A stretch of 64,000 nt of DNA from Zancudomyces culisetae HAW-14-8 (GCA_052426225.1 JBNJNM010000012.1:868001-932000); one strand, 5' to 3'. Numbered from the stretch's first letter, positions 374-42,255 are shown. Made by a program: numbers and translations. The notes: generated by a model from the letters alone, not told the origin.

Positions 374-1051
374 TTCCTATGCGTATTTACCTGTTGAAAT
401 GTTAATATGTTAATAATATGTTTTATTAGCTAGGATAAAAGTAAATATAAAATACCAAAATATATATATGAACTCTCTAAATATACTACATTTGAATTGA
501 CTCTGAAATTCACAAATGCCAAAAATTATGCTAACGTAATCAATACAATTGGGCTGTTTAAATTAAGCGTTAATTGCTTGGCTAATTTCATTGATAGATT
601 GATCGCCAACATTATTAGGGTAATTCAAAAAACGAGGAACTAAAAGGAACACTCAAGATGAAGTAGAACAAAGTGATAAAACAAACCGCAATACTAATAT
701 CTGAATACAGGCAGAAAAAAATTGAGGTATACCACTTTTGGAGCTTCTGAAAACGTACATCAGTAATATATCACGCAGAAAATCATCAAGCTACAGACAT
801 TTCCAATAATAGAGGCAAGAATAATCTATAATACAGATCTGTATTACAAAGTCAAATAGTAATCTAAAGGATAAAGTCGAGTTTGAAAATACTACGAACC
901 AAATATTGTAATAAATAAAATTAATAAATTAAAATAAAACAATAAAGTACAATAATAACAATGGGCAAAAAAGAGTAGAAAGGGAAAGAAAGAACAGAAA
1001 AAAAGCAAAAACTAAAAAAGCAACAAAAAGTATTGAGAATATGAAAAAAGT

Positions 1052-1124
1052 TAGAGCTATTGGGGATCGAACCCAAGACCTTCTGCGTGTAAAGCAGACG
1101 TGATAGCCACTACACCATAGCTCT
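1052..1124 (-). tRNA. tRNA-Val(TAC), copy 1
   Basis: 73-nt cloverleaf: acceptor AGAGCTA/TAGCTCT, anticodon arm TCTGC-TTTACAC-GCAGA, T arm TTGGG-TTCGATC-CCCAA. A T6 terminator follows at 1044-1049. Confidence 0.95.
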
Positions 1125-1127
1125 ATT

Positions 1128-1209
1128 CGTCACCTGCAGGATTCGAACCTGCGCTCCCAAAGGGAAATGGCTTAGCAGGCCACCGCGTTAACCACTCCGC
1201 CAAAGTGAC
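1128..1209 (-). tRNA. tRNA-Ser(GCT), copy 1, intronless
   Basis: 82 nt: acceptor GTCACTT/AGGTGAC plus G73, anticodon loop CT-GCT-AA, long variable arm CCCTTTGGG, GGTTCGAATCC B box. Confidence 0.95.
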
Positions 1210-3724
1210 TTACTTTTTTTCAACTACCTAAAAACTACCTATTACATGTATATCTACTTGTGTATTTGCTATTTTGTAATGGTAATATATCTGGTGTTTA
1301 CTATTGTTTCATTGGTATAAATACTGCTTGTATACATATTTATTGTTGTATAGCAGCTTTTGTATGTATTGGAAGCGTTTATGCTATTTTAGTACTAATT
1401 GTGTGGGTATATATATACTCTTAGTTTCAATTTTTTGTATAGTGCTGTTACTAGATAGACTTTGTAGAAACACTTTATATTGTGTGGTATTGTAGTGTCA
1501 AGATCGATTATAAGGGTGATAACACAGTAGATAAATAAAAGAATGAGTATATTAAATACTTTTTATTTTTTCATTCAAATTATTGTGATTATAAAAGATT
1601 GAATTACAAATCAATTACTCTTTATTTAGCTAAAGCTCGCTGAAGTACATATGTTTATAAATATGATTCTCACTTTGACTAGACTGTTATAACAGCCTTA
1701 CATTTTAATTTTCAGTTATTTTCATAAAAATTACTATATTTATATTTATTCAATGAAGCATTAACAGTATTTTCTTGAATAATTAAAATTATCTACTATT
1801 TATGCAAGATAACTATTAACTAGTTTAAACTTATCTAGTCTTTTCTGTTTTGTAACTCTGAGATAGAGCTATAAAATAGTTCTAGTTAAACAAGCAGTAT
1901 TAAGGATGAAATATGATTTTCTCACTTTAATAGAAGAATGTCATTTAACTGTAACAGTACTACATATTTTATAGGTAAATATTAAATTCTAGTCTCAATA
2001 AACACATATTGCTTGATGAGATTGATATTGATTAAAATTTTGGAAACCAAAAAGTATATAAATATACACATTGCTCACTCGAACCCAATAAACACGCCAA
2101 AGCAAATTTTCGATTATCTGCTAGTACAATGTTCTATTCTAACTCTTAACCTTTGCACAAAATGCAATATTTTTGTTTTTTTTTGTACAACGGATCTATT
2201 AAATAAATTAAGAAAAAAACTACAGAGAATAAACAACCTACATAATACATATCTAGCCAATTCATCTCCATACCACTTGAAATTTTATATCCACTGGGTG
2301 AATTTAAACAAAGATAATACTCTGGAAACCTTGATAAAGTATGTGTAGAGTTTTTATTTTTAAATTTATTATGTGTTTACAACTTTACAGCTAGTAAATA
2401 CAATTTCGATTTTGTTTCCCAAATCATCCAAATGGCCGACTTTCTGAATTAAAATTCATTTTACTTAATCCTGGTCAAGCTCTAGCTTATTTACACAAAG
2501 GAAAATTTTTTTGTATTATAATGGGTGTTTGTGCTTCAATATTAGCCTCAAAAACTTTAATGTCTCAACTCTGAGTATCACTAATTTTTTGCAACATTAA
2601 AAGCTATTTAAGCCGCTCAACTCATCGCTGAAATAATTTTGAATATCTCATGATACCTTTTCATGAAAAAGACAAAATGGAGTTAGTTAGAGGATTAATA
2701 TTACGAATATCGAGGGAATACTAAGCATCGGCTATGGGGTGTTATCTCACCACTACTACGTGTCAGATTTGAGCATAAAAGCTCTTCAGCTTGTAACACT
2801 ATAGGTTATTACCAGTTACATATAAAAAAATGTAGCTATATAGGATATGTAAAAATTGCTATACATGTGTGCTATTAATGACAATGTGTACATTTTTACG
2901 ACTGGTCTACGCTGGATTTATTCAACCATTTTGGTACAATTATAACAAATGATTGTTTTTTTTGTTTTGGTATGTTACCATAAAACCATATTATCTTTAA
3001 AAGTACTTTGCTAAATTATATCTATTACTAAAAACGATCTATACAACCAAATGATAGATAATGTATCTATAACTATTACAACTATTTCTAGAGTAAATGT
3101 GGTTTACAATTAAGCTCTTTAAAATTATAGAAGGTTGATCGTGAAAATTAGTACTAGTATAATCAATGAAGAAGTCAACACGAAAAATAGAAGATCAACT
3201 GAAATGACAAATAGTACATATAATTAATTGAAGTAGTAGTAGAGAATAAAATTATGCGATTATTCCAATTATATGATTTTCCAGCTGAGTGTGTTTTGTT
3301 TACTTTTATAATTTAGACTTTTGGTGTTTAATTTATAACCTATTCAAATTGGCTAAGTATTAAGTTCTGACACTTTTTCTGTTAAATTTGGGTATAACTT
3401 ATGTATAAACATGGTCTTTTGAACTATTATAGTAAATTCTTTGTTCAGCTTTGTTTAAAATACGAGTCAAACAAAGTGCAGTAAAATCATTTTTTTAAAA
3501 ATAATGCTAAAAAGTACCAATATAAGGTATAAATTTAGCCCAGTAAATGCAATATTACACCAACATAAATAAAACCTCAATTAACGTTGTAACATCAATT
3601 TAGGGTAATAAACGAAATAATATTATGCAAAATAATATAATCGGAAAAATAAATATTTAGAAGGATTAGTTATCTTAAAACGCAAAGCATCCAGGTAAAT
3701 TAAATAGTTAAATATAAATATTAG

Positions 3725-4078
3725 TAAATAAAAAAGTAATTATTATCCACAGTTAATTTTATCTACCGAGCTATCACCCTTATAATTCATTTTGACACTA
3801 CAATACCACACAATATAATGTATTTCTACAAAGTCTAACTAGTAACAACACTATACAAAAAATTGAAACCAAGAGTATATACATGCCCACACAATTAGTA
3901 CTAAAATAGTATAAACGCTTCCAATACATACAAAAGCTGCTATACAACAATAAATATGTATACAAGCAGTATTTATACCAATGAAACAATAGTAAACACC
4001 AGATATATTACCATTACAAAATAGCAAATACACAAGTAGATATACATGTAATAGGTAGTTTTTAGGTAGTTGAAAAAA
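3725..4078. repeat. Second copy of the tRNA upstream flank (no tRNA follows it)
   Basis: Inverted relative to 1215-1570. The proximal ~180 bp has 1 mismatch to the left arm, and the next 135 bp has about 13 mismatches. Confidence 0.9.
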
Positions 4079-4645
4079 TGTTGTATGCAAAAGCATCAAC
4101 TTAAATTTACCGCTTTCATTGCAGCAAAATAGCAGAGAAATCAATTTTGAAAAAATTGTTTCCTGCGCAACTCAATTTAGAGTACAAAAATTATGACCAT
4201 GTCATAAATTTTTGTCAATTGTACAGCCAATTTAATAGTACAAATCGATTTATTTTTTAATCGAATCGATTTTATACTTTATTAGTGGATTTATTTTTAA
4301 TCAATTTTATTAGTAAATTATTAGTATAAATTGAAAAAATTTGTAAATCCGACCAAAACCACACTAAAAGTAAAAATAAACATATATAGAGAGGCGTAAT
4401 ACTATTTTTTTAGTGTAAGGAAAGGGCCATTTTGGCTATATTTTCCAGGTTTTGGGAGGAATTCTTTTAAATAAAATTATTTTTACCAAAAATTGTGGAA
4501 ATTGTCCAGTTGTGTTCTTTCCGAGGGGGTTTTATAGATAGTGGTTAACTGGCTAGAAATGGTAAATCCTGTGTCAGTAATAACCACCCTTCTAGGGAAC
4601 CGTGATTGATATTAGTGGAAGTTTTTTGGGAAAATCCTATTGGAC
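4079..4645. mobile_element. Putative truncated LTR of a second retroelement family
   Basis: Interrupts the flank in the same A-run where the intact element inserted. Begins TGTTGTAT (the intact LTR begins TGTCGTAT), with a terminal hairpin GTTGTATGC-AAAA-GCATCAAC. No closing CA, TSD or coding remnant seen. Confidence 0.5.
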
Positions 4646-4829
4646 TAGTACTAAAATAGCATAAACGCTTCCAATACATACAAAAGCTGCTATACAACAA
4701 TAAATATGTATACAAGCAGTATTTATACCAATGAAACAATAGTAAACACCAGATATATTACCATTACAAAATAGCAAATACACAGGTAGATATACATGTA
4801 ATAGGTAGTTTTTAGGTAGTTGAAAAAAA
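4646..4829. repeat. Third copy of the tRNA upstream flank (184 bp)
   Basis: Direct repeat of 3896-4078 (2 substitutions) and inverted repeat of 1214-1397 (1 substitution). Starts at the palindrome TAGTACTA. Confidence 0.95.
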
Positions 4830-5153
4830 TGTCGTATAGAAATACGATTAGAAGGATAAGGGGAATTAGTCCCCGGTTTTATTTAAGTTGTTTTTAGTTA
4901 TATTTATATGTTTAGATTGGACCTTTTTCCCCTTGTGGTTTTGTCCAATGGTTTTTTATTAGTTAGTTATTTTAGTTTAATTAGTCAAATATTTGGGGGT
5001 TAAATGAAGCTCCCACTTGGAAGAAAAAATAAAATCATCTTTATTCACAATTAGAAAAACAGTCTATTCTAGTAAAAGTTTATTATTAGTATTATAAAAT
5101 AATACGATACAGTAAACCAAATTAAAATATATAACTATACTTTTTATTCATCA
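4830..5153 (+). repeat. 5' LTR
   Basis: TGTCGTATAG...TTATTCATCA; no mismatch to 9703-10026 found by eye. Confidence 0.97.
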
Positions 5154-5154
5154 G

Positions 5155-5172
5155 TGGCGCTCCCAGCTAGGC
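5155..5172 (+). promoter_or_regulatory. Primer-binding site
   Basis: TGGCGCTCCCAGCTAGGC, 1 nt after the LTR. Complementary to a tRNA 3' end ...CTAGC-TGGGAGC-G-CCA (G73, invariant C61). The cognate tRNA is not in the window; Arg or Lys are plausible. Confidence 0.85.
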
Positions 5173-5206
5173 GTTAGACTGAAGCTCGGTTGTATGAAAG
5201 ATCAAA

Positions 5207-8200
5207 ATGGATAATCTACATTTATTTGAGGCAGCTACAGGAGAGGATCCTGAGGAATGGGTCGCAAGTTTTGAATTGGTAGCTAAGCTTAATAAGTGGG
5301 ATGCAGCAAATTGGGTGGAGTTTATACAACTATATCTTGGAAAGATAGAAAAATTATGGTATAAAAGGAACAAGGCTACATTTGAAGATTGGGCAGATTT
5401 TAAAATGAAATTTAAAGATAATTTTAGGATTAAAGAACAGAGATTCGAATATTTTGAGAAGCTTAAGGAGATTAAACAATCAAAATTTGAGACTATCGAA
5501 GAGTTTGAGTTTAAACTGGAAGAGATTTTGGAGAATGCAGGTATCAAGATAGATTCGGATAAAGTGGACTGGTTACTAAGTGCCTTAAACTTAGATGCTA
5601 GGACCGCAGTAAAAGAGTATGGAGCTAAAACATGGCAGGAGATAATACAGTTTTTAAAGAAGTTTAAAACATCTAATCCGGGCTCAGTGGAGGATTCAAA
5701 TAGAGATTCAAATACCACCATACAACCAAAAGTTAAAACTGCAGTTAGAGGCAAGTCAATAAAACAGATGACAAATGAACATCTGGGGTATGAACAAATG
5801 GTGAAGAAGTGGGATGAGCTGAGTTTAAACTTGCTAAACAAAGTCGATCAAGTCATTGAGCAGAGGTTGAGAAATCAAAACAGACGATTTAGGAGTGACC
5901 AACCAAGAGTAATGAAGTGTTACTACTGTCACCAGGAAGGGCATCGGAAATATGAATGTGTAAGGTTTCGTGAGGCGGAAAATCAAGTACACAGCAAAGG
6001 TACAGACGTTAATATGATAGATATCCAGGACAGACCCGTAGAAAGAAGCGAAGTATTAGCAGTAGCCCGGCAGACAGCACAAACTAAACCAGAGAAGCCG
6101 TATAGCAGAGCAGCTAGTTACACCAGGATAGTGCCAAGAGCCGAGGGCACAAATCAAGTTAGGCCAAGGACAGTGGAGATGTTGGTGGACAAAGAAATGG
6201 AAGAGACACCAGCTAAGCAGAAGGTTACAGCCAAGGACAAAGTAAACGCAGTAGCAAAGCCAGTGGGTAAGGTCATGAGTAGTAAGACGCAAAGTGAAGA
6301 AGAAAACGGTCAAGGTTCACAAAGAGTCAGGAGCAAAGGAGTTTTAAAAATGGCCGAAGGTATAGAACCTTTTTCACTCAAGGAGCAGCTCGCAAAGTGG
6401 CGTCCTGACATAAGCCTACCTCAGTTAATGGAGATTTCGCCAAGTCTGACAACCGAAATGAGTAATCTATGCAAGAGAACAAAAAATGCTGAGCTAAACG
6501 AAATTAGACTAGAAGTACCAAGGATCACTAACTGTAAGATAATGGTAAAAATATTTGATAACGAATTTTGTGCAGTTGTAGATACAGGTGCCGCGTGTTC
6601 CGTGGCCACGCCAAGTCTATTGGACGAATGGGGTTTAATCGCAGAAGAGGAAAGTGACCAAATCATTGTTACTGCCGACGGGAAAAGGCACTACTCTTTG
6701 GGACGGGTAAATGAAGTGCCACTAATTATAGGAAGGTATCAGTTTCAGGTAAATGTAACTATCATGGAGAGAAGCGACAACACGTTGATTTTAGGCACTG
6801 ACTGGCTTCTAGAACACCAGGCACATATTGACTTGAAGAGTTCGGAGATGAGATTACCAATTGGTAACATGATGCTAATAGTACCGTTGTATACAACTTC
6901 TGGAAATGCCAGTGAGGAGTTTGAGACCTCGGAAGTTTACTACATGATCAAAGCACCTAGTATAGAGCAAACAACCGAAGAAGGATATGAGGACAAGCGG
7001 TTTGAGGAGATGCTAGAAAAAAATGTGGATCTCTTTGCAGAAGAGATAGATGACCTGACCCAAACACACGTAACAGAACATCGAATAGTGTTGAACGAAT
7101 CTACCCCTATCAAGCAGAAGCCCTATCGGATACCGCACCACCTACTCCAACAAGTCCGAAACGAGCTAAAGACAATGGAAACCAATGGCGTTATATCTCC
7201 GTGCGTATCAGAGTGGTGTTCGCCAGTCGTAGCTGTCTGGAAAAAAAATGGAAAGCTACGTATCTGCGCGGACTACAGGAAACTAAACAGCGTAACTAAA
7301 AAAGATTGTTACCCTTTACCGACCATCGAGGATATCTTTATGACACTGTCCGGGTCCAAGATATTTAGCAGCTTGGATGCCCGCAGTGGATTTTGGCAGA
7401 TTAGGATGAACTTGGAGGACAGAGACAAGACAGCATTTTCGATTCCTGGGAGCGGCAGCTACTGTTATAATGTCATGCCATTTGGCTTGAGTAACAGCCC
7501 CGCTTCATTTCAGAGATTAATGGAACAGGCATTATCCCCAGTGCTCTGGAAGACAGCGGTAGTCTTCATCGACGACATAATTATATTCTCGGAGACATTA
7601 GATCAACACTTAGCGGATCTACAAGAAGTATTCAACTTACTGAGAGAGAGTCAAGTACAGTTACATAAAGGGAAATGCAAGTTAGGGATGAAGAGATTGG
7701 AATATCTAGGGCACGTAATCTCAACGGAGGGAATAAGCACGAGTCCTAGTAAGATATCAGCAATGATGGAAACAAAGGAGCCTACATCGGTCAAAGAGTT
7801 GCAAGCATTCCTAGGACTAACGGGATACTACCGTAAGTTTGTAGTAGGGTACGCTACAACAGTTGCTCCTCTACTTAAGCTGCTGAAGAAGAATTGTGTG
7901 TGGTCCTGGACAGAGGAATGTAGTGGTGCAGTGAAGGAGTTAAAAGATAAACTATGCGAGGCACCCACACTCTCACATCCAGATTGGAGCAGAGAGTTTA
8001 TAGTTACGACTGATGCTAGCGTACAAGGAGTAGGTGCCATACTGTCACAGCAATTTCAAGAAGGAGAACGACCAATATCATATGTTAGCAGAATAACTAA
8101 CCAGCACGAGAAAAACTACTCCGTTTCGCATCTCGAAGGACTGGCCGTGATCTGGGCCGTTAGCAAGTTCAAGTATTATTTATATGGTAAACATTTCGTT

Positions 8201-9712
8201 ATAAGAACCGATCATAAATCCCTTATACAATTATTTAATAGCAAAGATATCACGGGAAGAGTGGCACGGTGGGCCATGATTCTCAGGAATTATGACTACA
8301 CCATTGTGCACATAGAAGGAAAGTCGAATCCAGCCGACGCATTGTCGCGATTGGACGGACAAAAAGATAAAAGTACAGAAGAAGCAATAGACGTATTTGC
8401 AATGGACTATTTATATTATTCAGCAATCAAAGATTATTTGGAAAATTATAATTATCCATCAGGTGCAGACGAAGGGTTTAGGAAAAAACTTCGCAACAAA
8501 GCTAGCAAATACATTTTGAAGGATGAGCTACTATACCGGAAATCTAAAGGCGTCTTAAAAGAAGTACTGCATGAGAAAAACATCAAAGAGTCAATAAAAA
8601 AGATACACGAAGAATCCCATCTAGGTATTGAAAACACATGGAGAGTGGCGGCTCAAAAGTATTCAGGAGAAGGACTGTACGAAGTAGTTAAACGTGTGGT
8701 AATGGAGTGTTTAAACTGTCAGTATTACAAAGGCAATAGAGAGAAGAGGAGCAAGTTAAACCCGATTGTAGGAAGAGAGCCATTCGAGATATTCGGATTA
8801 GATGCGGTGGGGCCAATTAACCCCGTTTCCGCATCAGGAAACAGATTCATCTTGACAGGTATCGACTACCTAACCAAGTGGCCAGTTGCTCAAGCGGTAA
8901 GTAACATTAGGTCCGAAACCATTGTCAATTTTATTATAACTAAGATAGTTCAGAACTTCGGAGTGCCCAAGCAGATTATAACCGATCGAGGATCAGGATT
9001 TTTAGGTGATGTGGCCCTCAAAGTATACGAATTTTTGCAAATTCGGCACACACCCACGACATCATATAGGCCGCAGTCAAACGGGCAGGTTGAGAGGCTC
9101 AACCAGACCCTCAAGAACGTGTTAGTTAAACAGTGTATGCACGATAAGGAAAATTGGGATGCCTATTTATGGAAATCTCTCTTAGCAGTTCGTACAATGA
9201 GGAACAGAGTAACACAGCTTAGTCCAGCAGAGTTACTATACGGAGTTAAACTCACGACGCCTACAATTTGGACACCACCTCCAGAAGTAGATAACTTCGA
9301 TATGGCCATCAAAGAAAGGATTGAGAACATTAAAACTGATATTGAGGAATTGAGAGGAATTGGATTGGAAAACAGTATCAAAGCAAAAGAGAAGGAGAAG
9401 ATAATATATGACAAACGGGTAGTGGAATTTAGATTCAAGGTGAACGACTTAGTAATGAAGGCAAACGAACAACAGTTAAGCAAGCTAGAAAGATTATGGG
9501 AAGGCCCATACAAGGTAGAGCGAGTACTAAGGTACGGTACATATGTGATCTCAGATAACGAAGGAAATCGCGATCTAGTGCACGGCGATATGCTCAAAGC
9601 TTTCCATTACAGTCAGTTTATGGTACCGGAAGTATCCGTAACCCTCAAGTCAAAGTTGAAACGGTTTAGGGAGCGTGTGAGTCCAATCTGGGGTCGGGGT
9701 TCTGTCGTATAG
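5207..9712 (+). CDS. Gag-Pol polyprotein, single ORF, 1501 aa
   Basis: CCHC knuckle CYYCHQEGHRKYEC; protease AVVDTGAACS; RT LRICADYRKLN, MPFGL, FIDDII; RNase H TDAS and NPADALSR; integrase HHCC, GLDAVGP, ITDRGS, SNGQVERLN and GPY/F (WEGPYKV). No chromodomain visible. Confidence 0.98.
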   Translation: MDNLHLFEAATGEDPEEWVASFELVAKLNKWDAANWVEFIQLYLGKIEKLWYKRNKATFEDWADFKMKFKDNFRIKEQRFEYFEKLKEIKQSKFETIEEFEFKLEEILENAGIKIDSDKVDWLLSALNLDARTAVKEYGAKTWQEIIQFLKKFKTSNPGSVEDSNRDSNTTIQPKVKTAVRGKSIKQMTNEHLGYEQMVKKWDELSLNLLNKVDQVIEQRLRNQNRRFRSDQPRVMKCYYCHQEGHRKYECVRFREAENQVHSKGTDVNMIDIQDRPVERSEVLAVARQTAQTKPEKPYSRAASYTRIVPRAEGTNQVRPRTVEMLVDKEMEETPAKQKVTAKDKVNAVAKPVGKVMSSKTQSEEENGQGSQRVRSKGVLKMAEGIEPFSLKEQLAKWRPDISLPQLMEISPSLTTEMSNLCKRTKNAELNEIRLEVPRITNCKIMVKIFDNEFCAVVDTGAACSVATPSLLDEWGLIAEEESDQIIVTADGKRHYSLGRVNEVPLIIGRYQFQVNVTIMERSDNTLILGTDWLLEHQAHIDLKSSEMRLPIGNMMLIVPLYTTSGNASEEFETSEVYYMIKAPSIEQTTEEGYEDKRFEEMLEKNVDLFAEEIDDLTQTHVTEHRIVLNESTPIKQKPYRIPHHLLQQVRNELKTMETNGVISPCVSEWCSPVVAVWKKNGKLRICADYRKLNSVTKKDCYPLPTIEDIFMTLSGSKIFSSLDARSGFWQIRMNLEDRDKTAFSIPGSGSYCYNVMPFGLSNSPASFQRLMEQALSPVLWKTAVVFIDDIIIFSETLDQHLADLQEVFNLLRESQVQLHKGKCKLGMKRLEYLGHVISTEGISTSPSKISAMMETKEPTSVKELQAFLGLTGYYRKFVVGYATTVAPLLKLLKKNCVWSWTEECSGAVKELKDKLCEAPTLSHPDWSREFIVTTDASVQGVGAILSQQFQEGERPISYVSRITNQHEKNYSVSHLEGLAVIWAVSKFKYYLYGKHFVIRTDHKSLIQLFNSKDITGRVARWAMILRNYDYTIVHIEGKSNPADALSRLDGQKDKSTEEAIDVFAMDYLYYSAIKDYLENYNYPSGADEGFRKKLRNKASKYILKDELLYRKSKGVLKEVLHEKNIKESIKKIHEESHLGIENTWRVAAQKYSGEGLYEVVKRVVMECLNCQYYKGNREKRSKLNPIVGREPFEIFGLDAVGPINPVSASGNRFILTGIDYLTKWPVAQAVSNIRSETIVNFIITKIVQNFGVPKQIITDRGSGFLGDVALKVYEFLQIRHTPTTSYRPQSNGQVERLNQTLKNVLVKQCMHDKENWDAYLWKSLLAVRTMRNRVTQLSPAELLYGVKLTTPTIWTPPPEVDNFDMAIKERIENIKTDIEELRGIGLENSIKAKEKEKIIYDKRVVEFRFKVNDLVMKANEQQLSKLERLWEGPYKVERVLRYGTYVISDNEGNRDLVHGDMLKAFHYSQFMVPEVSVTLKSKLKRFRERVSPIWGRGSVV
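9690..9699 (+). promoter_or_regulatory. Polypurine-tract-like element
   Basis: GGGGTCGGGG, 3 nt before the 3' LTR and inside the ORF. Confidence 0.7.
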
Positions 9713-10026
9713 AAATACGATTAGAAGGATAAGGGGAATTAGTCCCCGGTTTTATTTAAGTTGTTTTTAGTTATATTTATATGTTTAGATTGGACCTTTT
9801 TCCCCTTGTGGTTTTGTCCAATGGTTTTTTATTAGTTAGTTATTTTAGTTTAATTAGTCAAATATTTGGGGGTTAAATGAAGCTCCCACTTGGAAGAAAA
9901 AATAAAATCATCTTTATTCACAATTAGAAAAACAGTCTATTCTAGTAAAAGTTTATTATTAGTATTATAAAATAATACGATACAGTAAACCAAATTAAAA
10001 TATATAACTATACTTTTTATTCATCA
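9703..10026 (+). repeat. 3' LTR
   Basis: Copy of 4830-5153; contains the ORF stop codon (9710-9712). Confidence 0.97.
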
Positions 10027-10034
10027 AAAAGTAA

Positions 10035-10116
10035 GTCACTTTGGCGGAGTGGTTAACGCGGTGGCCTGCTAAGCCATTTCCCTTTGGGAGCGCAGGTTCG
10101 AATCCTGCAGGTGACG
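10035..10116 (+). tRNA. tRNA-Ser(GCT), copy 2
   Basis: Same sequence as 1128-1209(-). Confidence 0.95.
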
Positions 10117-10119
10117 AAT

Positions 10120-10192
10120 AGAGCTATGGTGTAGTGGCTATCACGTCTGCTTTACACGCAGAAGGTCTTGGGTTCGATCCCCAATAGCTCTA
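10120..10192 (+). tRNA. tRNA-Val(TAC), copy 2
   Basis: Same sequence as 1052-1124(-); starts after a 3-nt spacer following tRNA-Ser. Confidence 0.95.
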
Positions 10193-10194
10193 AC

Positions 10195-10200
10195 TTTTTT
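10195..10200 (+). terminator. RNA polymerase III T6 terminator
   Basis: TTTTTT 2 nt after tRNA-Val, followed by further T-runs; none between the two tRNAs. Confidence 0.85.
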
Positions 10201-12455
10201 CATATTCTCAATACTTTTTGTTGCTTTTTTAGTTTTTGCTTTTTTTCTGTTCTTTCTTTCCCTTTCTACTCTTTTTTGCCCATTGTTATTATTGTACTTT
10301 ATTGTTTTATTTTAATTTATTAATTTAATTTATTACAATATTAAACATTTTCGAATGCATAGAGCTTATTCATGTATCCGTTTTGACCCTTAAATTAAAC
10401 GCTAGCCCGAATCATGGTTGATGAGATTACCAGGGCCTCATCTTTATAATTTGGTAATTATCATATTGCATCAATTATTCTAACAGTTTTGGATTGGCTC
10501 TATAAATAGAAATGCCTATCAAACTCCTAGCCCTACACTCCCCTCTACCTTATTCACTCATCCTTGTTTAACTTTCTATATTTTTAGATTCTCTCGTCTA
10601 AGCGTATCAAAACCCTCAACGCGGTATCCATTTTCTTTTACATTTACACTCACCCACTATATTTTGATCGAACCTGACAGGCCACTAAACAGTTGAACAT
10701 TTTTAGCCACAACAATCTCTCATTCAACTAGCACTATAGCTCCCTGAGCTGCAATTAGTCTACTAGCCCAGTATTTCACACTCATACTTGCTTTTCTTTT
10801 CGTTTTTATATGCTGATTAATTGCCTCAGATTTGAACACCAGATCAAGGGTGGTAAAGTGGACCTCCGGTGAAAGCAACATCGCAGAAAAAACCTTAAAC
10901 AACCAGCTGAGCGAACCCAGACCGGCTACCTAAACTTTCCTCTGGCTCTTGCTAAAACAGAGCCTTAATGGCGGTCACTCTTCATCGTGCAATTAATTGG
11001 TAAGGTTTCCACAATTGCGGTCCAGCATCTAATATTTTGAATTTGTCAATTTAAGTCTAGTTATGGGGTTTAATTTTAATTACTTGCCAAAATTTTTTGG
11101 ATTTGCTGCTTTTAGTTTTCAATTTTTTTATCCAATTTCATTGTATAATTAGCTGTGTCAAAATTAAACAGTTCATTAGCTGTTAATAGGAAGATTGTTA
11201 CACTTGGACAAGTTCACAAAGCTCGCTACCTATTTTGTCTTTTTTTTTCTTGCTCATACTGAAATCAGGAATATACCGTGTAAGACGAGTCTGCGTCTTT
11301 TTTTTTAGGGAGGTCCAAAAATGTACAACCACCTCTGATAGGATATCAACACATCAGAAATACAAAACTAGTTGGACCACCGGAGTTAGTGACCTTTTAC
11401 TTTTAATGCCTTTTGCTATTTATTTTGCGTTTCACATATTCGCACACAAAGATACATATATGTATATATTAAAATTTCATTCCGTATCACCTGGCTTGTT
11501 CTACCATTGATTAAAGGCGATTTACTACATCAACCACCATAATTGCGTTAATAGCTTAGCAGTTTATTCTTCTCAAATGCTTCATTATTTCATTTCCTTT
11601 GAAAGCGCAACAATAATGCTTTTTTTGTCAGCCCAAATCCATCACTTTAGCGATACTTGAAACTCTTTTAACAAAAAAAGGCTCAGCTTTCTCTGTATTA
11701 GAAAATAAATTGTCTGAAATACATATTTCACATGCTAATTGGTCTTGCTAATATGTATTGCGCTTTATCCTAATAGGCATTTTCAATTGCAATTTGGAAA
11801 ACTAATAAATGAATGCTGCTGATTTGTTTAACCATATTACATAATATCACAACTAAAAAAATAAATAAAAACGAATTTTGCGTAATTGGACAACAAATTG
11901 GATGCACCCCGCCCAGCTTTAGGAAAACACCAAACATTTTCATAATTGCAAAGTATTTACAGCCACTTGGTGAATCATTTGTGTTCAAAATATGGCGCCT
12001 CTCTAGATTCCAAAAAATTATGGTTATAAAAATAGAGATGAGGTGTAATTTTGGAAACAAACAAAGGAAAAAATGGCCGGAAGCATCATTTCCGCAATTT
12101 GTGTTGAGGAAATATAATAGAAGAGTTTGAAAAAATCCGAAAACATATTAGAATTCAAGTTGGTTTTCGCATAAAATCGCACAATTTATAATTTACTGTG
12201 TCTATTTTTGTGATTGCAGTGTATTTTTTTTGATGTGATGAAAACGCTAGTAATAAAAGGTCAATTGGCAAAAGAATATAGACAATAGAAACCAACTCAA
12301 ATCATAATAAATATAGTGGTGATAGCAGAGAAAAGGGTGTTTAAATCTAAATTAATATCAGCATATACTTTACTACGGCTTTAATACACTCCACTTTCAC
12401 TTGTGAATATTCAAACACAAACGCAAAAATCAAGAATTCAACATATAGTATTTCA

Positions 12456-15400
12456 ATGGCCAGTTTTACACAAAACGGTGTAAAGAAAGGTGCAAAGATG
12501 TGGGTGGAAATATTTGATCCACACTCGAATTCAGTATTATATATCAACCCCGAAGACGGCGATTGTAGGCAGACTCGGCCAACAAATGAATTGGTGTAAG
12601 TTTCTTGATATCTCTATTTACTCTAAAATGCGTTATGGTAAATATTTAGTAAGAGATAAGTTGAATCTTTTGGATAGGCGGGAAAAGGATCCCAATGGGG
12701 AATGGTGGGAGTTGGTAGACGAAGAAAGCGGCGATTTGTACTATTACAACCCATATTTGAAATTGACAGAGTGGGAAGCTCCAAAAGACTCGATAATTAT
12801 ATGCGCCGAGGAATTTCTGGTATGTACTCCTTTTCTTTGAATTCTGAGCCTCTATAACCTTTTTTTAAAAAATAATATTATAGAATCCAGGAAAAAGCTC
12901 AGGAAAAAGTGCGAAAAAAGTAATAATTTTGCCAAATTCGGACAATAGGGTATCAAAAGAAGGTAAAAAGCTAATTATTATTTTAAGATTGCCCGGGTAG
13001 TACTAGTTTTATTAGATATTAGCAGGAAGGGCAATATTTTTCTGCATTTTAACCAAGATACCTTGGCACAAATAGTCAAAAACGCGAAGGAAGCCTTGTT
13101 CGAAGTTATCAAGTCGCCACTGCGCTCAAGCTATTTGGTAGGCGAAGTGATGCTGGGTTCTAGCACATCGCAAGACACACATGAAAAGAAGGATCGGCCT
13201 CTTTCATCGGATAAAACCACATCAGACAGCTTCAGAGTCTCGACACAATCTATCGCCTTGGAGATTTTTAAAAACGATTTAGAGAGTCGGGCGAGCGATT
13301 GTGATGATGTATCGGTTTCTGACGAGAAAAGCTTTCTTCTTGGGTGGGAAGATTACTTGAACAGAGGGATGGTTGCCTCAGAGGAAGCCATCTGTAATGC
13401 ACCAAACCAAATAGATGACACAAAAAGCAAAGCCGAGTTGACCAACTCGAACCTGGAAATTTCGAAGGATATCATGTTTGATGATATAAATGAGGACCTT
13501 GAAAACATTTTAAAGCTAGATTCACAGCTTATAATGGGCTCCCAGGGGAACTTTGATAACCTGTGTCAAAATAGTGATGTGGATACTCTAAAAATGGAAC
13601 ATTACAGACCGTCTACAGAGAGCCACAACAAAGGTAAGCTATGTTTTAGTTTACATTTTTTTATTAATATCATTTTTTTTCTTATACCAGATTTACAAAA
13701 ATACAGACCAATTTTTTTTTGCTAAAATTATAAACATGTAATAGTTAAACCTCCAAGTCTCAAAATAACTACCAAGAAACAACATAAACCTGAAGAGGAT
13801 GAGGACGCTGCTAGCAGCGTGTATTCCCTAGAGCAGCCGAAAAAAAAACTCGAATCTTTAGCTGTATGTGTTTAAAATGGCTTTTCTTTATTTAAAACAC
13901 ACGTGTTCATAAGTACTCTATTAAAATTGGAGTTTACGCAAATCCATGATTCATTTTTTACAATATTGCATAAACTATTACTACATTTAGGAATTCTTAA
14001 AATCGGGAAAATTGGATGAAGTACTTGGTACCGAAAGCAGTAAGAATATGAAAAAATTATACAAACTCTTTTTTTTTATGCCTAGCCCTTTTTTTGAATG
14101 TGTAACATAACATTATAAACTAAAGAAAAGAGTGGGCTTAGCTGGAATTGACAAAAGTTAGTGTTACAAAATATCTCTGAATTAATGTTAATCTTAAAAT
14201 TAAATAGAAACAAAGATGGTAGAAAAACAAAATAGAAAAGACCATATTGATTCGGGGCTCGTTATTGAGGATGAATCCAGCTACTTTAACTATTTCAACT
14301 TTGCATCTAGATACTTTGTGGAACAAAAGGGTGGGCTTTTCAGGAGAAGACTTTCAAAAGAACAACAGTTCAGCTTTACCACTGATGCAATTAGCTACCC
14401 ATTAACAGATATCCCAAAACCCAGATATAAGCATGCGTTGAACTCATTTATTGTGATTCAGCAAATAATGGGCGATAGACCCTCACAAGACATGGTCTCG
14501 TATACAGCCAATATCCAATTTATGATTAAATTGGGATTGAAGTATCGGGACCTGCACAATGAGATGTACTGCCAGCTCTGTAAGCAATTAGTGAGAAATA
14601 GAAATTGGAAAAGTTTACGCAAAGGGTGGCTGATAATGGCTGTTATTGCGAGCGTATTTGTCCCTAACGATGTTTTTTTCAAGGACCTCATTACATTTTT
14701 GTCTGATCAGTCACAAAGGTTTAAGGAACATTCCAGTCTTTCGCCAATTTACAGGCAGCTGCGGACCATAATTGTTTATACCCATGCCAAGCTTTTAAAT
14801 ACAAAGAAATTCGGCGGCAGATCCTCACCCTACACTATTACAGAGCTAGAGTATGCTCTTAAAGCACCTATGAGGATCCCGTTGTTCGGTGTTACCCTTG
14901 ATGACATTATGAAGGTACCGGCATATGTAGATTCAAAATTCAACATTCCTTTTCTGCTACGGTTTCTGATAGATAGAATAATTGAGCTGAAAGGCTTAGA
15001 AACTGAGGGGATTTTTAGGATTCCTGGGTATAAAGACTTGGTAATAACTTTGGTAAGTTGATTATCTCTCGTTATTTAATTAAGCACCAGTAAAATATGT
15101 AACGTGATGTTTTATTATGTGAGGACATTAACTGAGCAAAGTTTAATGTAGTTGTATTACTTTATATGTAGCGAATGATGCTAGAAGCTGGCGAATCTGA
15201 CTTTGTGTATTTGGATGATGTGAATGTATACGCATCCCTGTTAAAAGAGTGGTTAAGAGAGCTTCTGCTACCACTAATTCCGATAAATCATTATCTAGAC
15301 TGCATACAAAATTCATCAAATGTAGAGATGGCACACCGGATAATATCACAACTTTCTCCTCTGCATTATCGTACTACAAAATACCTGTTGGATTTTTTAA

Positions 15401-37972: not shown

Positions 37973-39529
37973 TTAAGGCCTGAAAAATTGGTTCTGTGAA
38001 AGCTGCCACTGGCGCCACATTTGATACTGTTGGGGTGTAATGTTATTGAGACCATATCCTGGTGTAGCAGCATTCGCATTAGCATTTGCATTTGCATTCG
38101 CACTGGGATTGGCATTAGCAGCAGTAGGAGTAGGAGTTGCTGTGTTGGCAGTAATTCCGGGAGTACTTAAAGCACCAGGAGTCGCAGACGAAGCACCAGC
38201 ACTCGCGTTTTGGCTGTGGGATGCTAGCAGAACCTCAGCAGCATTAGGATTGCCTACTGCAGCAGCAGAAAGAAGTCCAGATTGCAGCAGAGGGGAAACA
38301 AGTGGGTTTGCCGCAGAAATGTTAAACCCGCCAGAATTCCCCCCAGAAGAAACTGTGGGATTCATACCAATCGCCCCCATGTTCATCCCAAGTCCACCCA
38401 GCCCGCCAAGGTTCATTGCGTTCATGTTCATTGCATTCATGTTTACACCCATCCCCATGTTGGCATTGGTATTTGGGTTTTGGGCAGATAATGACGGAGT
38501 ACCACGTAGATGTGAATGAGCAGCGGCATGTGTAGCGTGTGCTTGTGCTTGTGCTTGAGTTTGTGCTTGAGTTTGGTTTTGAGTTTGACTCTGGCTTTGG
38601 TTTTGGCTTTGGTTCTGATTTTGGCTTTGAGCCTGGCTTTGGTTTTGACCATGTTGATGTGATTGAGATAGCGAATGAACAGAGCCCATGACATTCTGTT
38701 TGGCTCCAGAATTGGCCAAGGCATTGAGGTTATTCAGTAATAGAGAGCTAGGAAGATTACCAACATTTCCACCCGCGTTAGCATTAGCAAATAAACTGTT
38801 AAGCGATTGGATATTCAGCTGAGCCAGTGGATTGTTTAAACTCATGTTGGCATTGCTGCCTGTGCTTTTATTTTCTGACATATAATGTGCCTGCTGAGCC
38901 TGTTGTTGTTGTTGTTGTTGAGCTTGTTGTTGCTGAGCTTGTTGTTGAGCTTGCTGTTGAGCTTGTTGTTGGGCTTGTTGTTGAGCTTGTTGAGCTTGTT
39001 GTTGCTGCTGTTGTTGCTGTTGTTGCTGCTGCTGAGCTTGTTGTTGTTGTTGTTGTTGTTGCTGCTGAGCTTGTTGTTGTTGTTGTTGTTGTTGTTGCTG
39101 TTGTTGTTTCTGGGCCAAAAGAATTTGTAGGGAAGTAGCTTGTTGAGATGGATGAAGAGCACGAAGCTGGTTAATTTGATCAGTTGATAAATTGATACCA
39201 TTTGCAGCAAACAACGAAACTAAGTCTACTGGTGAGGCAGCTGATGCAGACAATGATGAGTCCTGTTGAGACTTTTGTTGGGCCTGTTGTTGGGCTTGTT
39301 GTTGTTGAGCTTGTTGTTGAGCTTGTTGGGCCTTTTGTGCTTGTGCCTGCGCTTGTGCTTGTGCTTGTGCCTGTGCCTGAGCCTGAGCCTGTGCCTGAGC
39401 TTGTGCCTGAGCCTGTGCTTGTTGTTGTTGTTGTTGTTGTAACTGTTGTTGCTGAGCTTGTTGTTGTTGCTGCTGAGCTTGTTGTTGTTGTTGTTGTTGC
39501 TTTTGTAACTGCTGGGCTTTTTGCTGAGC

Positions 39530-39562
<33 letters not shown>

Positions 39563-42224: not shown

Positions 42225-42255
<31 letters not shown>

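What the first reader, a model, noticed from the sequence alone, without database searches (positions are those of the whole stretch)
4079..10192. Candidate tRNA-gene-targeting Ty3/gypsy system: two different insertions at the same site upstream of tRNA-Ser, with the empty site preserved in the window
Seen: the empty site (reverse complement around 1205-1226) reads TAGTTG-A7-GTAA-[tRNA-Ser]. The filled site reads TAGTTG-A7-[LTR...LTR]-A4-GTAA-[tRNA-Ser], so the element ends 8 bp before the mature tRNA 5' end. A third copy of the same flank is interrupted after TAGTTG-A6 by a different sequence that also begins TGTyGTAT. Known: S. cerevisiae Ty3 integrates at Pol III start sites via TFIIIB, and Dictyostelium DGLT-A inserts just upstream of tRNA genes. 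Inference: two hits within about 1 bp of one site indicate position-specific, Pol III-guided integration by a non-chromodomain element in an early-diverging fungus. I know of no description of this there, but cannot check.
Basis: partly seen in the sequence, partly recalled or inferred. Interest (0 to 1): 0.9.

Follow-up and report, generated by a model that had tools for sequence, protein, structure and literature searches.

The report
tRNA-gene-targeting retrotransposons in a gut fungus
An apparently intact Ty3/gypsy retrotransposon sits exactly 8 bp in front of a tRNA gene, and genome-wide a whole radiation of related elements inserts at that same spot in front of about 60% of sampled tRNA loci, a Ty3-like homing behaviour that I could not find described for an early-diverging fungus.

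Summary

**In the window**
- Window 4830-10026 is a full Ty3/gypsy element ("A"): identical 324-bp LTRs and one 1501-aa gag-PR-RT-RNaseH-IN reading frame.
- It is flanked by a 4-bp duplication (AAAA) and ends 8 bp before tRNA-Ser(GCU).
- An inverted paralogous empty site lies at 1210-1220.
- 4079-4656 is a truncated solo LTR of a second family ("B", at least 40 LTR copies). Its 5' end abuts the same A-run, 1 bp off.

**Genome-wide (27 Mb, most likely Zancudomyces culisetae)**
- A, B and at least eight other LTR families end 2-14 bp (mode 8) upstream of many different tRNA genes.
- Their 4-bp duplications are not A-runs.
- 32 of 54 sampled nuclear tRNA units are occupied.
- Orientation is biased: 26 of 28 oriented insertions run the same way as the tRNA.
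- Repeated hits build LTR stacks with 4-bp spacers.

**Integrase**
- It has no chromodomain and no room for Ty3's vestigial one.
- It carries a short, conserved, lineage-specific C-terminal tail motif, which is a candidate tether. This is inferred, not tested.

This is a new lineage of a known kind, the Pol III-start-site-targeting LTR retrotransposons.

The parts
1050..1209 (-). Paralogous tRNA-Ser(GCT) (1128-1209) and tRNA-Val(TAC) (1050-1125) pair, 2 nt apart, with no insertion upstream.
   Evidence: ARAGORN. 902-1218 is 99.7% identical to 10026-10342.
1210..1220 (-). Empty target site: A7 (1220-1214) plus GTAA (1213-1210), directly upstream of tRNA-Ser.
   Evidence: Sequence read.
1214..1568 (-). 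Upstream flank of the empty paralogue. The proximal 184 bp (1214-1397) is 99.5% identical to 4646-4829. Over its full length the flank is 92.7% identical to 3726-4081. In the 104 aligned columns just distal to the proximal block there are 7 mismatches to copy 1.
   Evidence: blastn of the window against itself and alignment A1.
3726..4078 (+). Flank copy 1, ending TAGTTG-A6. It is interrupted at the canonical site by the family-B LTR.
4079..4656 (+). Solo LTR of family B. It holds positions 1-578 of an LTR of about 597 nt and starts TGTTGTATGC; the last 19 nt are missing.
   Evidence: At least 40 genomic copies at 93-100% identity. The full LTR end (..GAATTCAACA) was read from 30 copies.
4646..4656 (+). 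11-nt microhomology TAGTACTAAAA, shared by the B LTR tail and the tRNA-Ser flank. It is the junction of the rearrangement.
4646..4829 (+). Flank copy 2 (184 bp), ending TAGTTG-A7.
4826..4829 (+). Left copy of the 4-bp target-site duplication (AAAA) of element A.
   Evidence: The empty site has A7; the filled site has A7 + A4.
4830..5153 (+). 5' LTR of element A (324 bp, TGTCGTAT...TTCATCA).
5155..5172 (+). Primer-binding site (TGGCGCTCCCAGCTAGGC), 1 nt after the LTR. Several other LTR families in this genome use the same site.
5207..9712 (+). Single gag-pol reading frame of 1501 aa. Pfam domains by residue: gag 53-113, protease 446-534, RT 679-838, RNase H 926-1029, integrase zinc domain 1123-1175, integrase core 1206-1289. 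No chromodomain.
   Evidence: the ORF listing and Pfam. The best solved RT/RNase H homologue is Ty3 (4OL8, E 5.5e-83). The integrase matches Ty3 7Q5B at E 5e-13.
9449..9601 (+). SH3-like integrase C-terminal domain with the GPY motif (residues about 1415-1465).
   Evidence: AlphaFold2 model: beta-barrel with pLDDT about 82. Alignments.
9620..9670 (+). Conserved C-terminal tail motif (MVPEV..TLKSKLKRFR, residues 1472-1488) in a tail predicted to be disordered. Candidate targeting determinant.
   Evidence: M, P, V, L, S, L, R and F are invariant across families 49-62% identical. The motif is present in 7 of the 120 listed homologues and absent from the other 113.
9690..9702 (+). Polypurine-like tract (GGGGTCGGGGTTC), directly before the 3' LTR.
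   Evidence: Sequence read.
9703..10026 (+). 3' LTR of element A, 100% identical to the 5' LTR.
10027..10034 (+). Right copy of the duplication (AAAA, 10027-10030) plus GTAA. Together these are the 8-bp gap to the tRNA.
10035..10194 (+). Targeted tRNA-Ser(GCT) (10035-10116) and tRNA-Val(TAC) (10119-10194) pair.
   Evidence: ARAGORN.

Best explanation
**What it is.** The window holds two independent insertions by a radiation of Ty3/gypsy LTR retrotransposons. They integrate position-specifically just upstream of tRNA genes.

- Element A (4830-10026) looks young: identical LTRs, one open gag-pol frame, a primer-binding site, a polypurine tract and a 4-bp duplication.
- The family-B LTR (4079-4656) is an older hit at the same site. 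It was later reduced to a solo LTR and rearranged.

**How it most likely works.**

- The integrase joins the LTR ends (TG..CA) to target DNA with a 4-bp stagger, centred on positions -8 to -5 from the first base of the mature tRNA. For tRNA pairs this is the first tRNA of the pair.
- It usually does so with the element pointing the same way as the tRNA.
- Such precision and directionality, regardless of tRNA identity and local sequence, are best explained by tethering of the intasome to the Pol III pre-initiation complex (TFIIIB and/or TFIIIC), as shown for Ty3 and DGLT-A.
- The contact surface must differ from Ty3's, because there is no chromodomain. The conserved short motif in the disordered integrase tail is the best candidate.
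- Each new insertion lands between the previous element and the tRNA. This builds LTR stacks separated by 4-bp spacers.

**Shown:** anatomy, positions, duplications, orientation bias, stacks and the conserved tail.

**Inferred:** the protein tether and the role of the tail.

**History of the window (inferred).**
1. B inserted at the A-run of the right-hand paralogue and became a solo LTR.
2. A repair or gene-conversion event copied about 500 bp from an empty paralogue or allele. One end resolved in the 11-nt microhomology in B's tail.
3. A then inserted at the restored site.
For: **Anatomy.**

**Family A and its sister family, genome-wide.**
- A has three full elements and several solo LTRs.
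- A LTR 3' ends lie 7-8 bp before tRNA-Ser/Val, tRNA-Gln and two different tRNA-Glu/Met loci, with duplications AAAA, GACA, AAAA, AAAA.
- A sister family lies before tRNA-Ala/Lys, Phe/Leu, Ser(TGA)/Gly and Ile.

**Family B.**
- Its 3' ends lie 7-9 bp before tRNA-Lys, Thr, Pro/Cys, Ser(GCT)/Val and Ile.
- Duplications read from B elements are CAAT, GCAC, ACGA, ACAG, AACA and TCGT.

**tRNA-side sample.**
- 32 of 54 nuclear tRNA units carry a repeat terminus 2-14 bp upstream.
- Gap counts: 2 bp x1, 3 x2, 4 x1, 6 x4, 7 x6, 8 x10, 9 x5, 10 x1, 12 x1, 14 x1.

**Orientation.**
- Every LTR family seen at two or more tRNAs lies on the same strand relative to the tRNA, with two exceptions.
- Where the absolute orientation is known, 26 insertions are direct and 2 reverse (binomial two-sided p about 3e-6).

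**Stacks.**
- A, then D, then tRNA-Glu; paralogous copies lack D.
- B, then another LTR, then tRNA-Ile or tRNA-Lys.
- In an independent public assembly, three successive LTR insertions are separated by the identical spacer CGAC, followed by CGACATAA and tRNA-Val.

**Integrase tail.**

**Precedents.** PMC5911963, PMC8632968 and PMC6101501 describe the Ty3 and DGLT-A mechanisms.
Against: - No protein-protein contact was tested.
- The Pol III start site in this organism is unknown. The empty-site consensus ACAAAAAA(A/G)TT suggests it may lie 2-5 nt upstream of the insertion point.
- 5S genes (all in rDNA units) and the single U6 gene carry no LTR upstream. Targeting of Pol III genes in general, as opposed to tRNA genes, is therefore unproven.
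- Some gaps are 2-4 or 10-14 bp, and one stack (L046) lacks matching duplications, so the rule is not absolute.
- The genome could only be sampled: 63 top-scoring tRNA hits and 40 scored LTR hits per search.
- The orientation bias could partly reflect selection after insertion.
- In Smittium culicis, relatives with the same tail motif were not seen 8 bp upstream of tRNAs. One sits 13 bp downstream of a tRNA and two sit in LTR stacks.
Confidence: 0.9

Rival explanations
1. The elements simply prefer A-rich or otherwise easily bent DNA. tRNA upstream regions happen to contain A-runs, so the association is indirect.
For: In the window both hits lie in an A7 run. Empty tRNA upstream sites read ACAAAAAA(A/G)TT. 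Several duplications are AAAA.
Against: - Many duplications are not A-runs: GACA, CAAT, GCAC, ACGA, ACAG, TCGT, CGAC.
- A-runs are everywhere in a genome of about 36% GC, yet every readable LTR 3' end is next to a tRNA, another LTR or its own primer-binding site.
- The distance is measured from the tRNA, not from any sequence motif.
Confidence: 0.02
2. Integration is random or only loosely regional. Purifying selection in a compact genome leaves only the harmless copies next to tRNA genes.
For: The genome is small (27 Mb). tRNA upstream regions are classic safe havens (PMC5006619).
Against: - Selection cannot produce a modal distance of exactly 8 bp, 4-bp spacers repeated through stacks, or a 26:2 orientation bias.
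- Copies with identical LTRs (the window copy, and the C11 and C10 copies) already sit at the exact position.
Confidence: 0.04
3. The association is inflated by segmental duplication of a few LTR-plus-tRNA units, not by repeated independent targeting.
For: Inverted and dispersed duplicates of whole tRNA loci with their LTRs do exist: C6 1717406/1738579, C10 1276429/1292840, C11 1960924/2032899 and L111/L112. The window's own tRNA pair is duplicated.
Against: After collapsing duplicates there remain more than 30 insertions. They lie at different tRNA species, with different flanks, gaps and duplications, and belong to at least 10 LTR families.
Confidence: 0.02
4. Targeting is real but is guided by a DNA or chromatin feature of active tRNA genes, such as a nucleosome-free or bent region or a replication-fork pause. 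It would not depend on a specific contact between the integrase and a Pol III transcription factor.
For: - No contact was tested.
- The integrase lacks Ty3's Brf1-binding chromodomain.
- Bendability contributes to Ty3 site choice (PMC8632968).
Against: - Single-base precision and strong directionality point to an asymmetric protein ruler.
- In every studied case of such precision (Ty3, DGLT-A, TRE5-A) the element contacts TFIIIB or TFIIIC (PMC5911963, PMC6101501).
- A lineage-specific conserved integrase tail exists.
Confidence: 0.1

Closest known systems
Ty3 of Saccharomyces cerevisiae (Metaviridae)
   Same: - Ty3/gypsy gene order.
- Ty3 RT/RNase H is the best solved homologue (4OL8, E 5.5e-83).
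- Position-specific insertion a few bp upstream of tRNA genes, leaving the gene intact.
- tRNA-primed primer-binding site.
   Different: - Site about 8 bp rather than about 15 bp from the mature 5' end (PMC6101501).
- 4-bp duplication; Ty3's is 5 bp (from memory).
- One gag-pol frame rather than GAG3/POL3 joined by a +1 frameshift.
- No vestigial chromodomain after the integrase C-terminal domain; in Ty3 that domain binds Brf1 and acts as the ruler (PMC8632968).
- Strong orientation bias here.
- The host is a zygomycete, not a yeast.
DGLT-A of Dictyostelium discoideum
   Same: - Single gag-pol reading frame.
- No chromodomain.
- Insertion in a narrow window upstream of tRNA genes.
   Different: - DGLT-A sits 13-18 bp upstream, in either orientation, and contacts Tfc4 through its RNase H and the integrase N-terminal extension (PMC6101501, PMC5911963).
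- No full-length DGLT-A copy survives in D. discoideum, whereas here copies have identical LTRs and an open frame.
- Different eukaryotic supergroup.
Tj1 (Schizosaccharomyces japonicus), Tyl3/Ylt1/Tyl6 (Yarrowia lipolytica), beta/Tca8 (Candida albicans)
   Same: Fungal Ty3/gypsy elements found 1-30 bp upstream of the tRNA start site or mature end (Table 1 of PMC5911963).
   Different: - All are in Ascomycota.
- None is reported with this occupancy (about 60% of sampled tRNA loci), this many co-existing families, or the tail motif.
- Their relationship to the present lineage was not tested.
Skipper-2 (Dictyostelium) and chromoviruses
   Same: Ty3/gypsy elements whose integrase C-terminus decides the target. 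Skipper-2 inserts 8-23 bp downstream of tRNA genes. That geometry resembles the single Smittium culicis relative seen here, 13 bp downstream of a tRNA.
   Different: They carry a canonical or diverged chromodomain. The present elements have none.

Membership tests
Ty3/gypsy (Metaviridae) LTR retrotransposon | Two direct LTRs ending TG..CA and flanked by a short target-site duplication | tested here: met
   The LTRs are 324 bp and 100% identical, TGTCG..ATCA. The duplication is AAAA, judged against the empty paralogue.
Ty3/gypsy (Metaviridae) LTR retrotransposon | Domain order gag-PR-RT-RNaseH-IN, with integrase after RT | tested here: met
   Pfam hits lie in that order along the 1501-aa frame. 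Ty3 RT/RNase H is the best PDB match.
Ty3/gypsy (Metaviridae) LTR retrotransposon | Primer-binding site after the 5' LTR and a polypurine tract before the 3' LTR | tested here: met
   TGGCGCTCCCAGC.. starts 1 nt after the LTR and is shared by other families. A G-rich tract lies at 9690-9702.
Pol III start-site-targeting LTR retrotransposons (functional class) | Independent insertions fall in a narrow window upstream of many different tRNA genes | tested here: met
   More than 30 independent insertions lie at 2-14 bp (mode 8) before tRNAs of many specificities.
Pol III start-site-targeting LTR retrotransposons (functional class) | The target gene is left intact, and empty and filled sites differ only by the element plus the duplication | tested here: met
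   Window 902-1218 versus 10026-10342 is 99.7% identical; A7 becomes A7 + A4.
Pol III start-site-targeting LTR retrotransposons (functional class) | Other Pol III genes (5S, U6) are also targeted | tested here: inconclusive
   All six 5S hits are identical in score, and five are spaced about 13.2 kb apart as in rDNA units. There is a single U6 gene. None has an LTR within 400 bp upstream. These are too few independent targets.
Pol III start-site-targeting LTR retrotransposons (functional class) | An element protein binds TFIIIB, TFIIIC or Pol III | not testable with these tools
   Not tested. The TBP gene is split by introns and the partner is unknown, so no complex prediction was run.
Ty3 lineage proper | Vestigial chromodomain after the integrase C-terminal domain that contacts Brf1 | tested here: not met
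   Only about 35 residues follow the SH3-like domain. The AlphaFold2 model shows no further folded domain, with tail pLDDT below 55. Pfam finds no chromodomain.
Ty3 lineage proper | 5-bp target duplication and separate GAG3/POL3 frames | tested here: not met
   All duplications read are 4 bp. The element has a single reading frame.
Ty3 lineage proper | Phylogenetic grouping with Ty3 in RT/IN trees | not tested
   No named reference sequences could be obtained. The integrase scores lower against Ty3 (52 bits) than against foamy-virus integrase (67 bits).
Chromoviruses | Chromodomain at the integrase C-terminus | tested here: not met
   PF00385 is absent here but present in several 36-37% identical homologues.
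DGLT-A-like elements | Insertion 13-18 bp upstream of tRNA genes in either orientation | tested here: not met
   The modal distance is 8 bp and the orientation count is 26 direct to 2 reverse.

The most novel reading that the evidence does not exclude
Pol III-gene homing arose independently in a zygomycete (Harpellales) lineage of Ty3/gypsy elements. It would use a new kind of ruler: a short linear motif, M-[VI]-P-E-V...L-[KR]-S-K-L-[KR]-R-F-[KR], in a disordered integrase tail. That motif would dock directionally on the Pol III pre-initiation complex and place the cuts at -8 to -5. The terminal CA of the LTR would then take over as the tRNA start site. The motif also occurs in relatives from Smittium species and from Actinomortierella (Mortierellomycotina). 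It may therefore mark an old clade of early-diverging fungi whose members use different geometries, upstream or downstream of tRNA genes.
Probability: 0.3. Interest if true: 0.75.

Novelty: new member of a known kind. Interest (0 to 1): 0.6.

Why it matters
- Position-specific homing to tRNA genes is the textbook way for retrotransposons to survive in compact genomes. Its mechanism is known in detail only for Ty3 in budding yeast and, in part, for Dictyostelium elements.
- Table 1 of the 2018 review PMC5911963 lists such Ty3/gypsy elements only from Ascomycota and Dictyostelium.
- My literature searches found nothing for Zoopagomycota or Harpellales.
- This lineage offers a third, apparently young system with about ten co-existing families and very high occupancy.
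- It shows a strong orientation bias, and its integrase lacks Ty3's chromodomain ruler.
- That makes the question of convergent versus ancestral targeting, and of how a different integrase reads the Pol III complex, directly testable.
- It also matters for annotation: in this genome, LTR stacks mark tRNA genes and drive local rearrangements and duplications of tRNA loci.

Tried and rejected
- **Large flanks.** I asked for 9-kb flanks around 55 tRNA units. I fetched 430-bp pieces instead, so pol genes upstream of sampled tRNAs could not be counted.
- **Public reads.** Reads were laid on 3600-5400 to check the odd junctions. Two runs held only pieces of the B LTR with its canonical end and primer-binding site. 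There is no independent check of the 4078/4079, 4645/4646 or 4829/4830 junctions.
- **5S and U6 upstream regions.** No LTR, but uninformative.
- **Primer tRNA.** No tRNA gene matching either primer-binding site occurs among the fetched loci.
- **TATA-like elements supplied by LTR ends.** No difference between empty sites (7 of 19) and occupied sites (11 of 32). The idea was dropped.
- **Is the tRNA-Ser flank a relic B-like LTR?** Beyond the 11-nt match and a loosely similar tail there is no similarity by blastn or by eye. I treat it as microhomology.
- **Metagenome scan with the integrase-tail alignment.** Nothing found.
- **Contig of homologue P0012.** Its neighbours look bacterial, so it says nothing here.
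- **Homologue P0002 (55% identical, carries the tail motif).** Its DNA could not be fetched.
- **Short contigs from Smittium mucronatum and Actinomortierella.** No flank information.
- **Complex prediction.** Not run. The partner is unknown and the host TBP gene is split by introns, so a negative result would mean nothing.
- **RT/IN tree with Ty3, Tj1, DGLT-A and chromoviruses.** Not built, because named reference sequences could not be imported.

Full report
**Observation**

ARAGORN finds four tRNA genes in the window: tRNA-Val(TAC) 1050-1125 and tRNA-Ser(GCT) 1128-1209 on the minus strand, and the same pair at 10035-10116 and 10119-10194 on the plus strand.

- Upstream of the left pair the sequence reads TAGTTG, A7, GTAA, then the tRNA.
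- Upstream of the right pair it reads TAGTTG, A7, a 5197-bp element, AAAA, GTAA, then the tRNA.
- The element has 324-bp LTRs (4830-5153 and 9703-10026) that are 100% identical. The repeat tool capped its report at 300 bp.
- It therefore ends 8 bp before the mature tRNA 5' end and is flanked by a 4-bp duplication.
- A further copy of the flank (3726-4078) ends TAGTTG-A6 and is followed at 4079 by a different sequence beginning TGTTGTATGC.

**Element A**

- One reading frame (5207-9712, 1501 aa) carries gag, aspartic protease, RT, RNase H, the integrase zinc domain and the integrase core, in that order. It has no chromodomain.
- The best solved homologue of the RT/RNase H region is Ty3 (4OL8, E 5.5e-83).
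- The integrase matches Ty3 (7Q5B, E 5e-13) no better than foamy-virus integrase.
- A primer-binding site (TGGCGCTCCCAGC..) starts 1 nt after the 5' LTR. A G-rich tract precedes the 3' LTR.
- Identical LTRs and an open frame indicate a recent insertion.

**The second sequence**

- 4079-4645 matches at least 40 places in the genome at 93-100% identity, often in pairs 5.8-14 kb apart.
- Reading 30 copies shows that the full LTR of this family (B) continues for another 30 nt and ends ..GAATTCAACA. It is followed in 5' LTRs by a primer-binding site (TGGGGGCTCTGCC..).
- In the window the B LTR is a solo copy that stops at position 578 of about 597.

**The organism**

- The genome has 27.1 Mb in 25 contigs.
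- The closest proteins are named Zancudomyces culisetae: 95% identity, with other families at 46-63%.
- A contig of the public Z. culisetae assembly carries the same LTR families.
- Zancudomyces is a member of the Harpellales (PMC10386755), so 'early-diverging fungus' is right.

**Is it targeting? From the element side**

Family A:
- The three full A elements end 8, 8 and 7 bp before tRNA-Ser/Val, tRNA-Gln and tRNA-Glu/Met, with duplications AAAA, GACA and AAAA.
- A solo A LTR lies 8 bp before another tRNA-Glu/Met locus that has since been duplicated to four places.
- A sister family (66-79% integrase identity) lies before tRNA-Ala/Lys, Phe/Leu, Ser(TGA)/Gly and Ile.

Family B:
- Family B ends 7-9 bp before tRNA-Lys, Thr, Pro/Cys, Ser(GCT)/Val and Ile.
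- Duplications read from B elements are CAAT, GCAC, ACGA, ACAG, AACA and TCGT.

Every other readable A or B 3' end is followed either by its own primer-binding site or, after 0-6 bp, by the start of another LTR (TGTYRTAT..). The targets are not A-runs.

**From the tRNA side**

- A genome search with the Rfam tRNA model scored 63 genes, which fall into 55 units. One lies on a 61-kb contig that looks mitochondrial.
- I fetched 400 bp upstream of each and compared them with all fetched loci.
- Of 54 nuclear units, 32 have a repeat that ends 2-14 bp before the first tRNA of the unit.
- The gaps are 2 bp (1 unit), 3 (2), 4 (1), 6 (4), 7 (6), 8 (10), 9 (5), 10 (1), 12 (1) and 14 (1).
- Three units are uncertain and 19 are empty. 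The empty sites read ACAAAAAA(A/G)TT.
- At least ten LTR families take part.

**Orientation**

- Whenever one LTR family lies next to two or more tRNA units it is on the same strand relative to the tRNA.
- There are two exceptions. One B element has its 5' LTR 8 bp from an inverted tRNA-Ser(TGA), with duplication TCGT. One copy of a family here called D is also reversed.
- The absolute orientation is known from primer-binding sites, or from gag or integrase coding sequence next to the LTR. For these insertions the count is 26 direct (3' LTR next to the tRNA 5' end) and 2 reverse.
- The binomial two-sided p is about 3e-6.

**Stacks**

If each insertion duplicates positions -8 to -5, a later insertion should lie between the earlier LTR and the tRNA, separated from the earlier LTR by the same 4 bp. 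This is what is seen.

- At two paralogous tRNA-Glu/Met loci the A solo LTR is separated from the tRNA by a later D LTR. The other two paralogues lack D.
- B LTRs are followed by one more LTR and then tRNA-Ile or tRNA-Lys.
- In the public assembly an older LTR, a full element and a solo LTR are separated by CGAC, CGAC and CGACATAA before tRNA-Val.
- One stack (L046) lacks matching duplications, so recombination also reshapes these arrays.

**The window's rearrangement**

- The block 902-1397 on the minus strand holds the tRNA pair, about 150 bp downstream of it and 184 bp upstream. It is 99.5-99.7% identical to 4646-4829 plus 10026-10342.
- Flank copy 1 matches the left paralogue at 92.7% overall. 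There is only 1 mismatch in the proximal 184 bp, against 7 in the next 104 columns.
- The boundary coincides with TAGTACTAAAA, an 11-nt string present both in the flank and at positions 568-578 of the B LTR.
- The simplest history has three steps. B inserted at the A-run, 1 bp upstream of A's later site, and became a solo LTR. A repair or conversion event then copied the block from an empty paralogue or allele, with one end resolving in the microhomology. That event removed B's last 19 nt and recreated a clean A7 site, into which A then inserted.
- This history is inferred. Public reads could not verify the junctions.

**Mechanism**

The position is set from the tRNA whatever its identity or the local sequence, and it is directional. 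In the studied cases such behaviour comes from contacts with the Pol III machinery.
- Ty3 integrase binds TBP and Brf1 through its C-terminal domain and a vestigial chromodomain that acts as a ruler. TFIIIC sets the orientation (PMC8632968).
- DGLT-A binds Tfc4 through its RNase H and the integrase N-terminal extension (PMC6101501).

Here only about 35 residues follow the SH3-like C-terminal domain. An AlphaFold2 model shows the barrel (pLDDT about 82) followed by a low-confidence tail and no further domain.

That tail carries a motif that is invariant at eight positions (M, P, V, L, S, L, R, F) across families only 49-62% identical.
- It is present in 7 of the 120 listed homologues: six from Zancudomyces and one from an unnamed sample. 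It is absent from the other 113.
- A profile search of 1.8 billion representatives found 15 more proteins with the motif. The ten I looked up come from Zancudomyces, Smittium culicis, S. mucronatum, S. megazygosporum, Actinomortierella wolfii and two unnamed samples.

I therefore propose tethering to TFIIIB or TFIIIC through this tail. This is inference only.

**Cross-species look**

I read three S. culicis elements with the motif.
- Two lie in LTR stacks with no tRNA in the 4-5 kb read.
- One has near-identical LTRs and duplication AAAA. It lies 13 bp downstream of a tRNA-Ser(CGA), in its T-run, tail to tail.

The association with tRNA genes may thus be older than Zancudomyces, but with varying geometry. 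Three elements are too few to say.

**Comparison and novelty**

- The 2018 review (PMC5911963, Table 1) lists Pol III-start-site-targeting Ty3/gypsy elements only from Ascomycota (Ty3, Ty3p, Tj1, beta/Tca8, Tyl3, Ylt1, Tyl6) and Dictyostelium (DGLT-A, Skipper-2).
- Full-text searches for Zancudomyces, Harpellales, Kickxellomycotina or Zoopagomycota together with retrotransposon or tRNA terms found no description.
- The present elements work like Ty3 but fail the tests for the Ty3 lineage proper: the duplications are 4 bp, there is a single frame, and there is no vestigial chromodomain. They also fail the tests for chromoviruses and for DGLT-A-like geometry.
- I file them as a new lineage of a known functional kind. 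Whether they are convergent needs a phylogeny that I could not build.

**Limits**

- The genome could only be sampled.
- The Pol III start site is unknown.
- 5S and U6 genes were uninformative.
- No binding was tested.

Noticed in passing
window 1050-1209 and 10035-10194; loci L005, L022, L025, L028, L042 and others: Many tRNA genes in this genome come as head-to-tail pairs only 0-7 nt apart: Ser-Val, Glu-Met, Ala-Lys, Phe-Leu, Ser-Gly, Pro-Cys and Thr followed by a second tRNA. They are probably dicistronic. About 18 of the 55 sampled units are pairs.
   Followed up: partly
G000 C6:1717406/1738579, C10:1276429/1292840, C11:1960924/2032899; window 902-1568 versus 3726-10342: Whole tRNA loci, with their LTRs, recur as inverted duplicates 9-72 kb apart and on other contigs. 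This suggests that LTR stacks at tRNA genes promote segmental duplication and gene conversion.
   Followed up: partly
L123:5161-5540 (Smittium culicis, LSSM01003739.1): A relative with the same integrase tail motif, near-identical LTRs and duplication AAAA lies 13 bp downstream of tRNA-Ser(CGA). It sits in the tRNA's T-run, tail to tail, a Skipper-2-like geometry. Two other S. culicis relatives (L121, L122) lie in LTR stacks.
   Followed up: partly
P0160 (Actinomortierella wolfii), P0131, P0159: An integrase tail with a variant of the motif (MVPE[LV]..AAKPLRS.L.R[FY]R) occurs in a Mortierellomycotina fungus and in two unnamed samples. The contigs are too short to see the targets.
   Followed up: no
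L061-L115, last 12 nt before the empty tRNA genes: Unoccupied tRNA genes share the upstream consensus ACAAAAAA(A/G)TT. An LTR end (..ACA) plus its duplication recreates a similar CA-plus-A-rich context, so the LTR terminus might serve as the Pol III start site after insertion.
   Followed up: no
L119 (ENA contig_39200), 9228-12736: A Ty3/gypsy-like gag and pol (41% identical) sits on a metagenomic contig whose other genes look bacterial (sigma factor, NrdR, YbeY). This may be a chimeric assembly or a transfer. It was not examined.
   Followed up: no
window 37973-44284 (-): A 2103-aa open frame with long CAA/CAG (poly-Q) repeats at 38.9-39.1, 40.2-40.4 and 42.2-42.4 kb. It is unrelated to the finding.
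   Followed up: no
G000 C18 (61 kb), L103: This contig carries closely packed, AT-rich tRNA-Ile(GAT), Asp and Cys genes. It is probably the mitochondrial genome and was left out of the tRNA sample.
   Followed up: no
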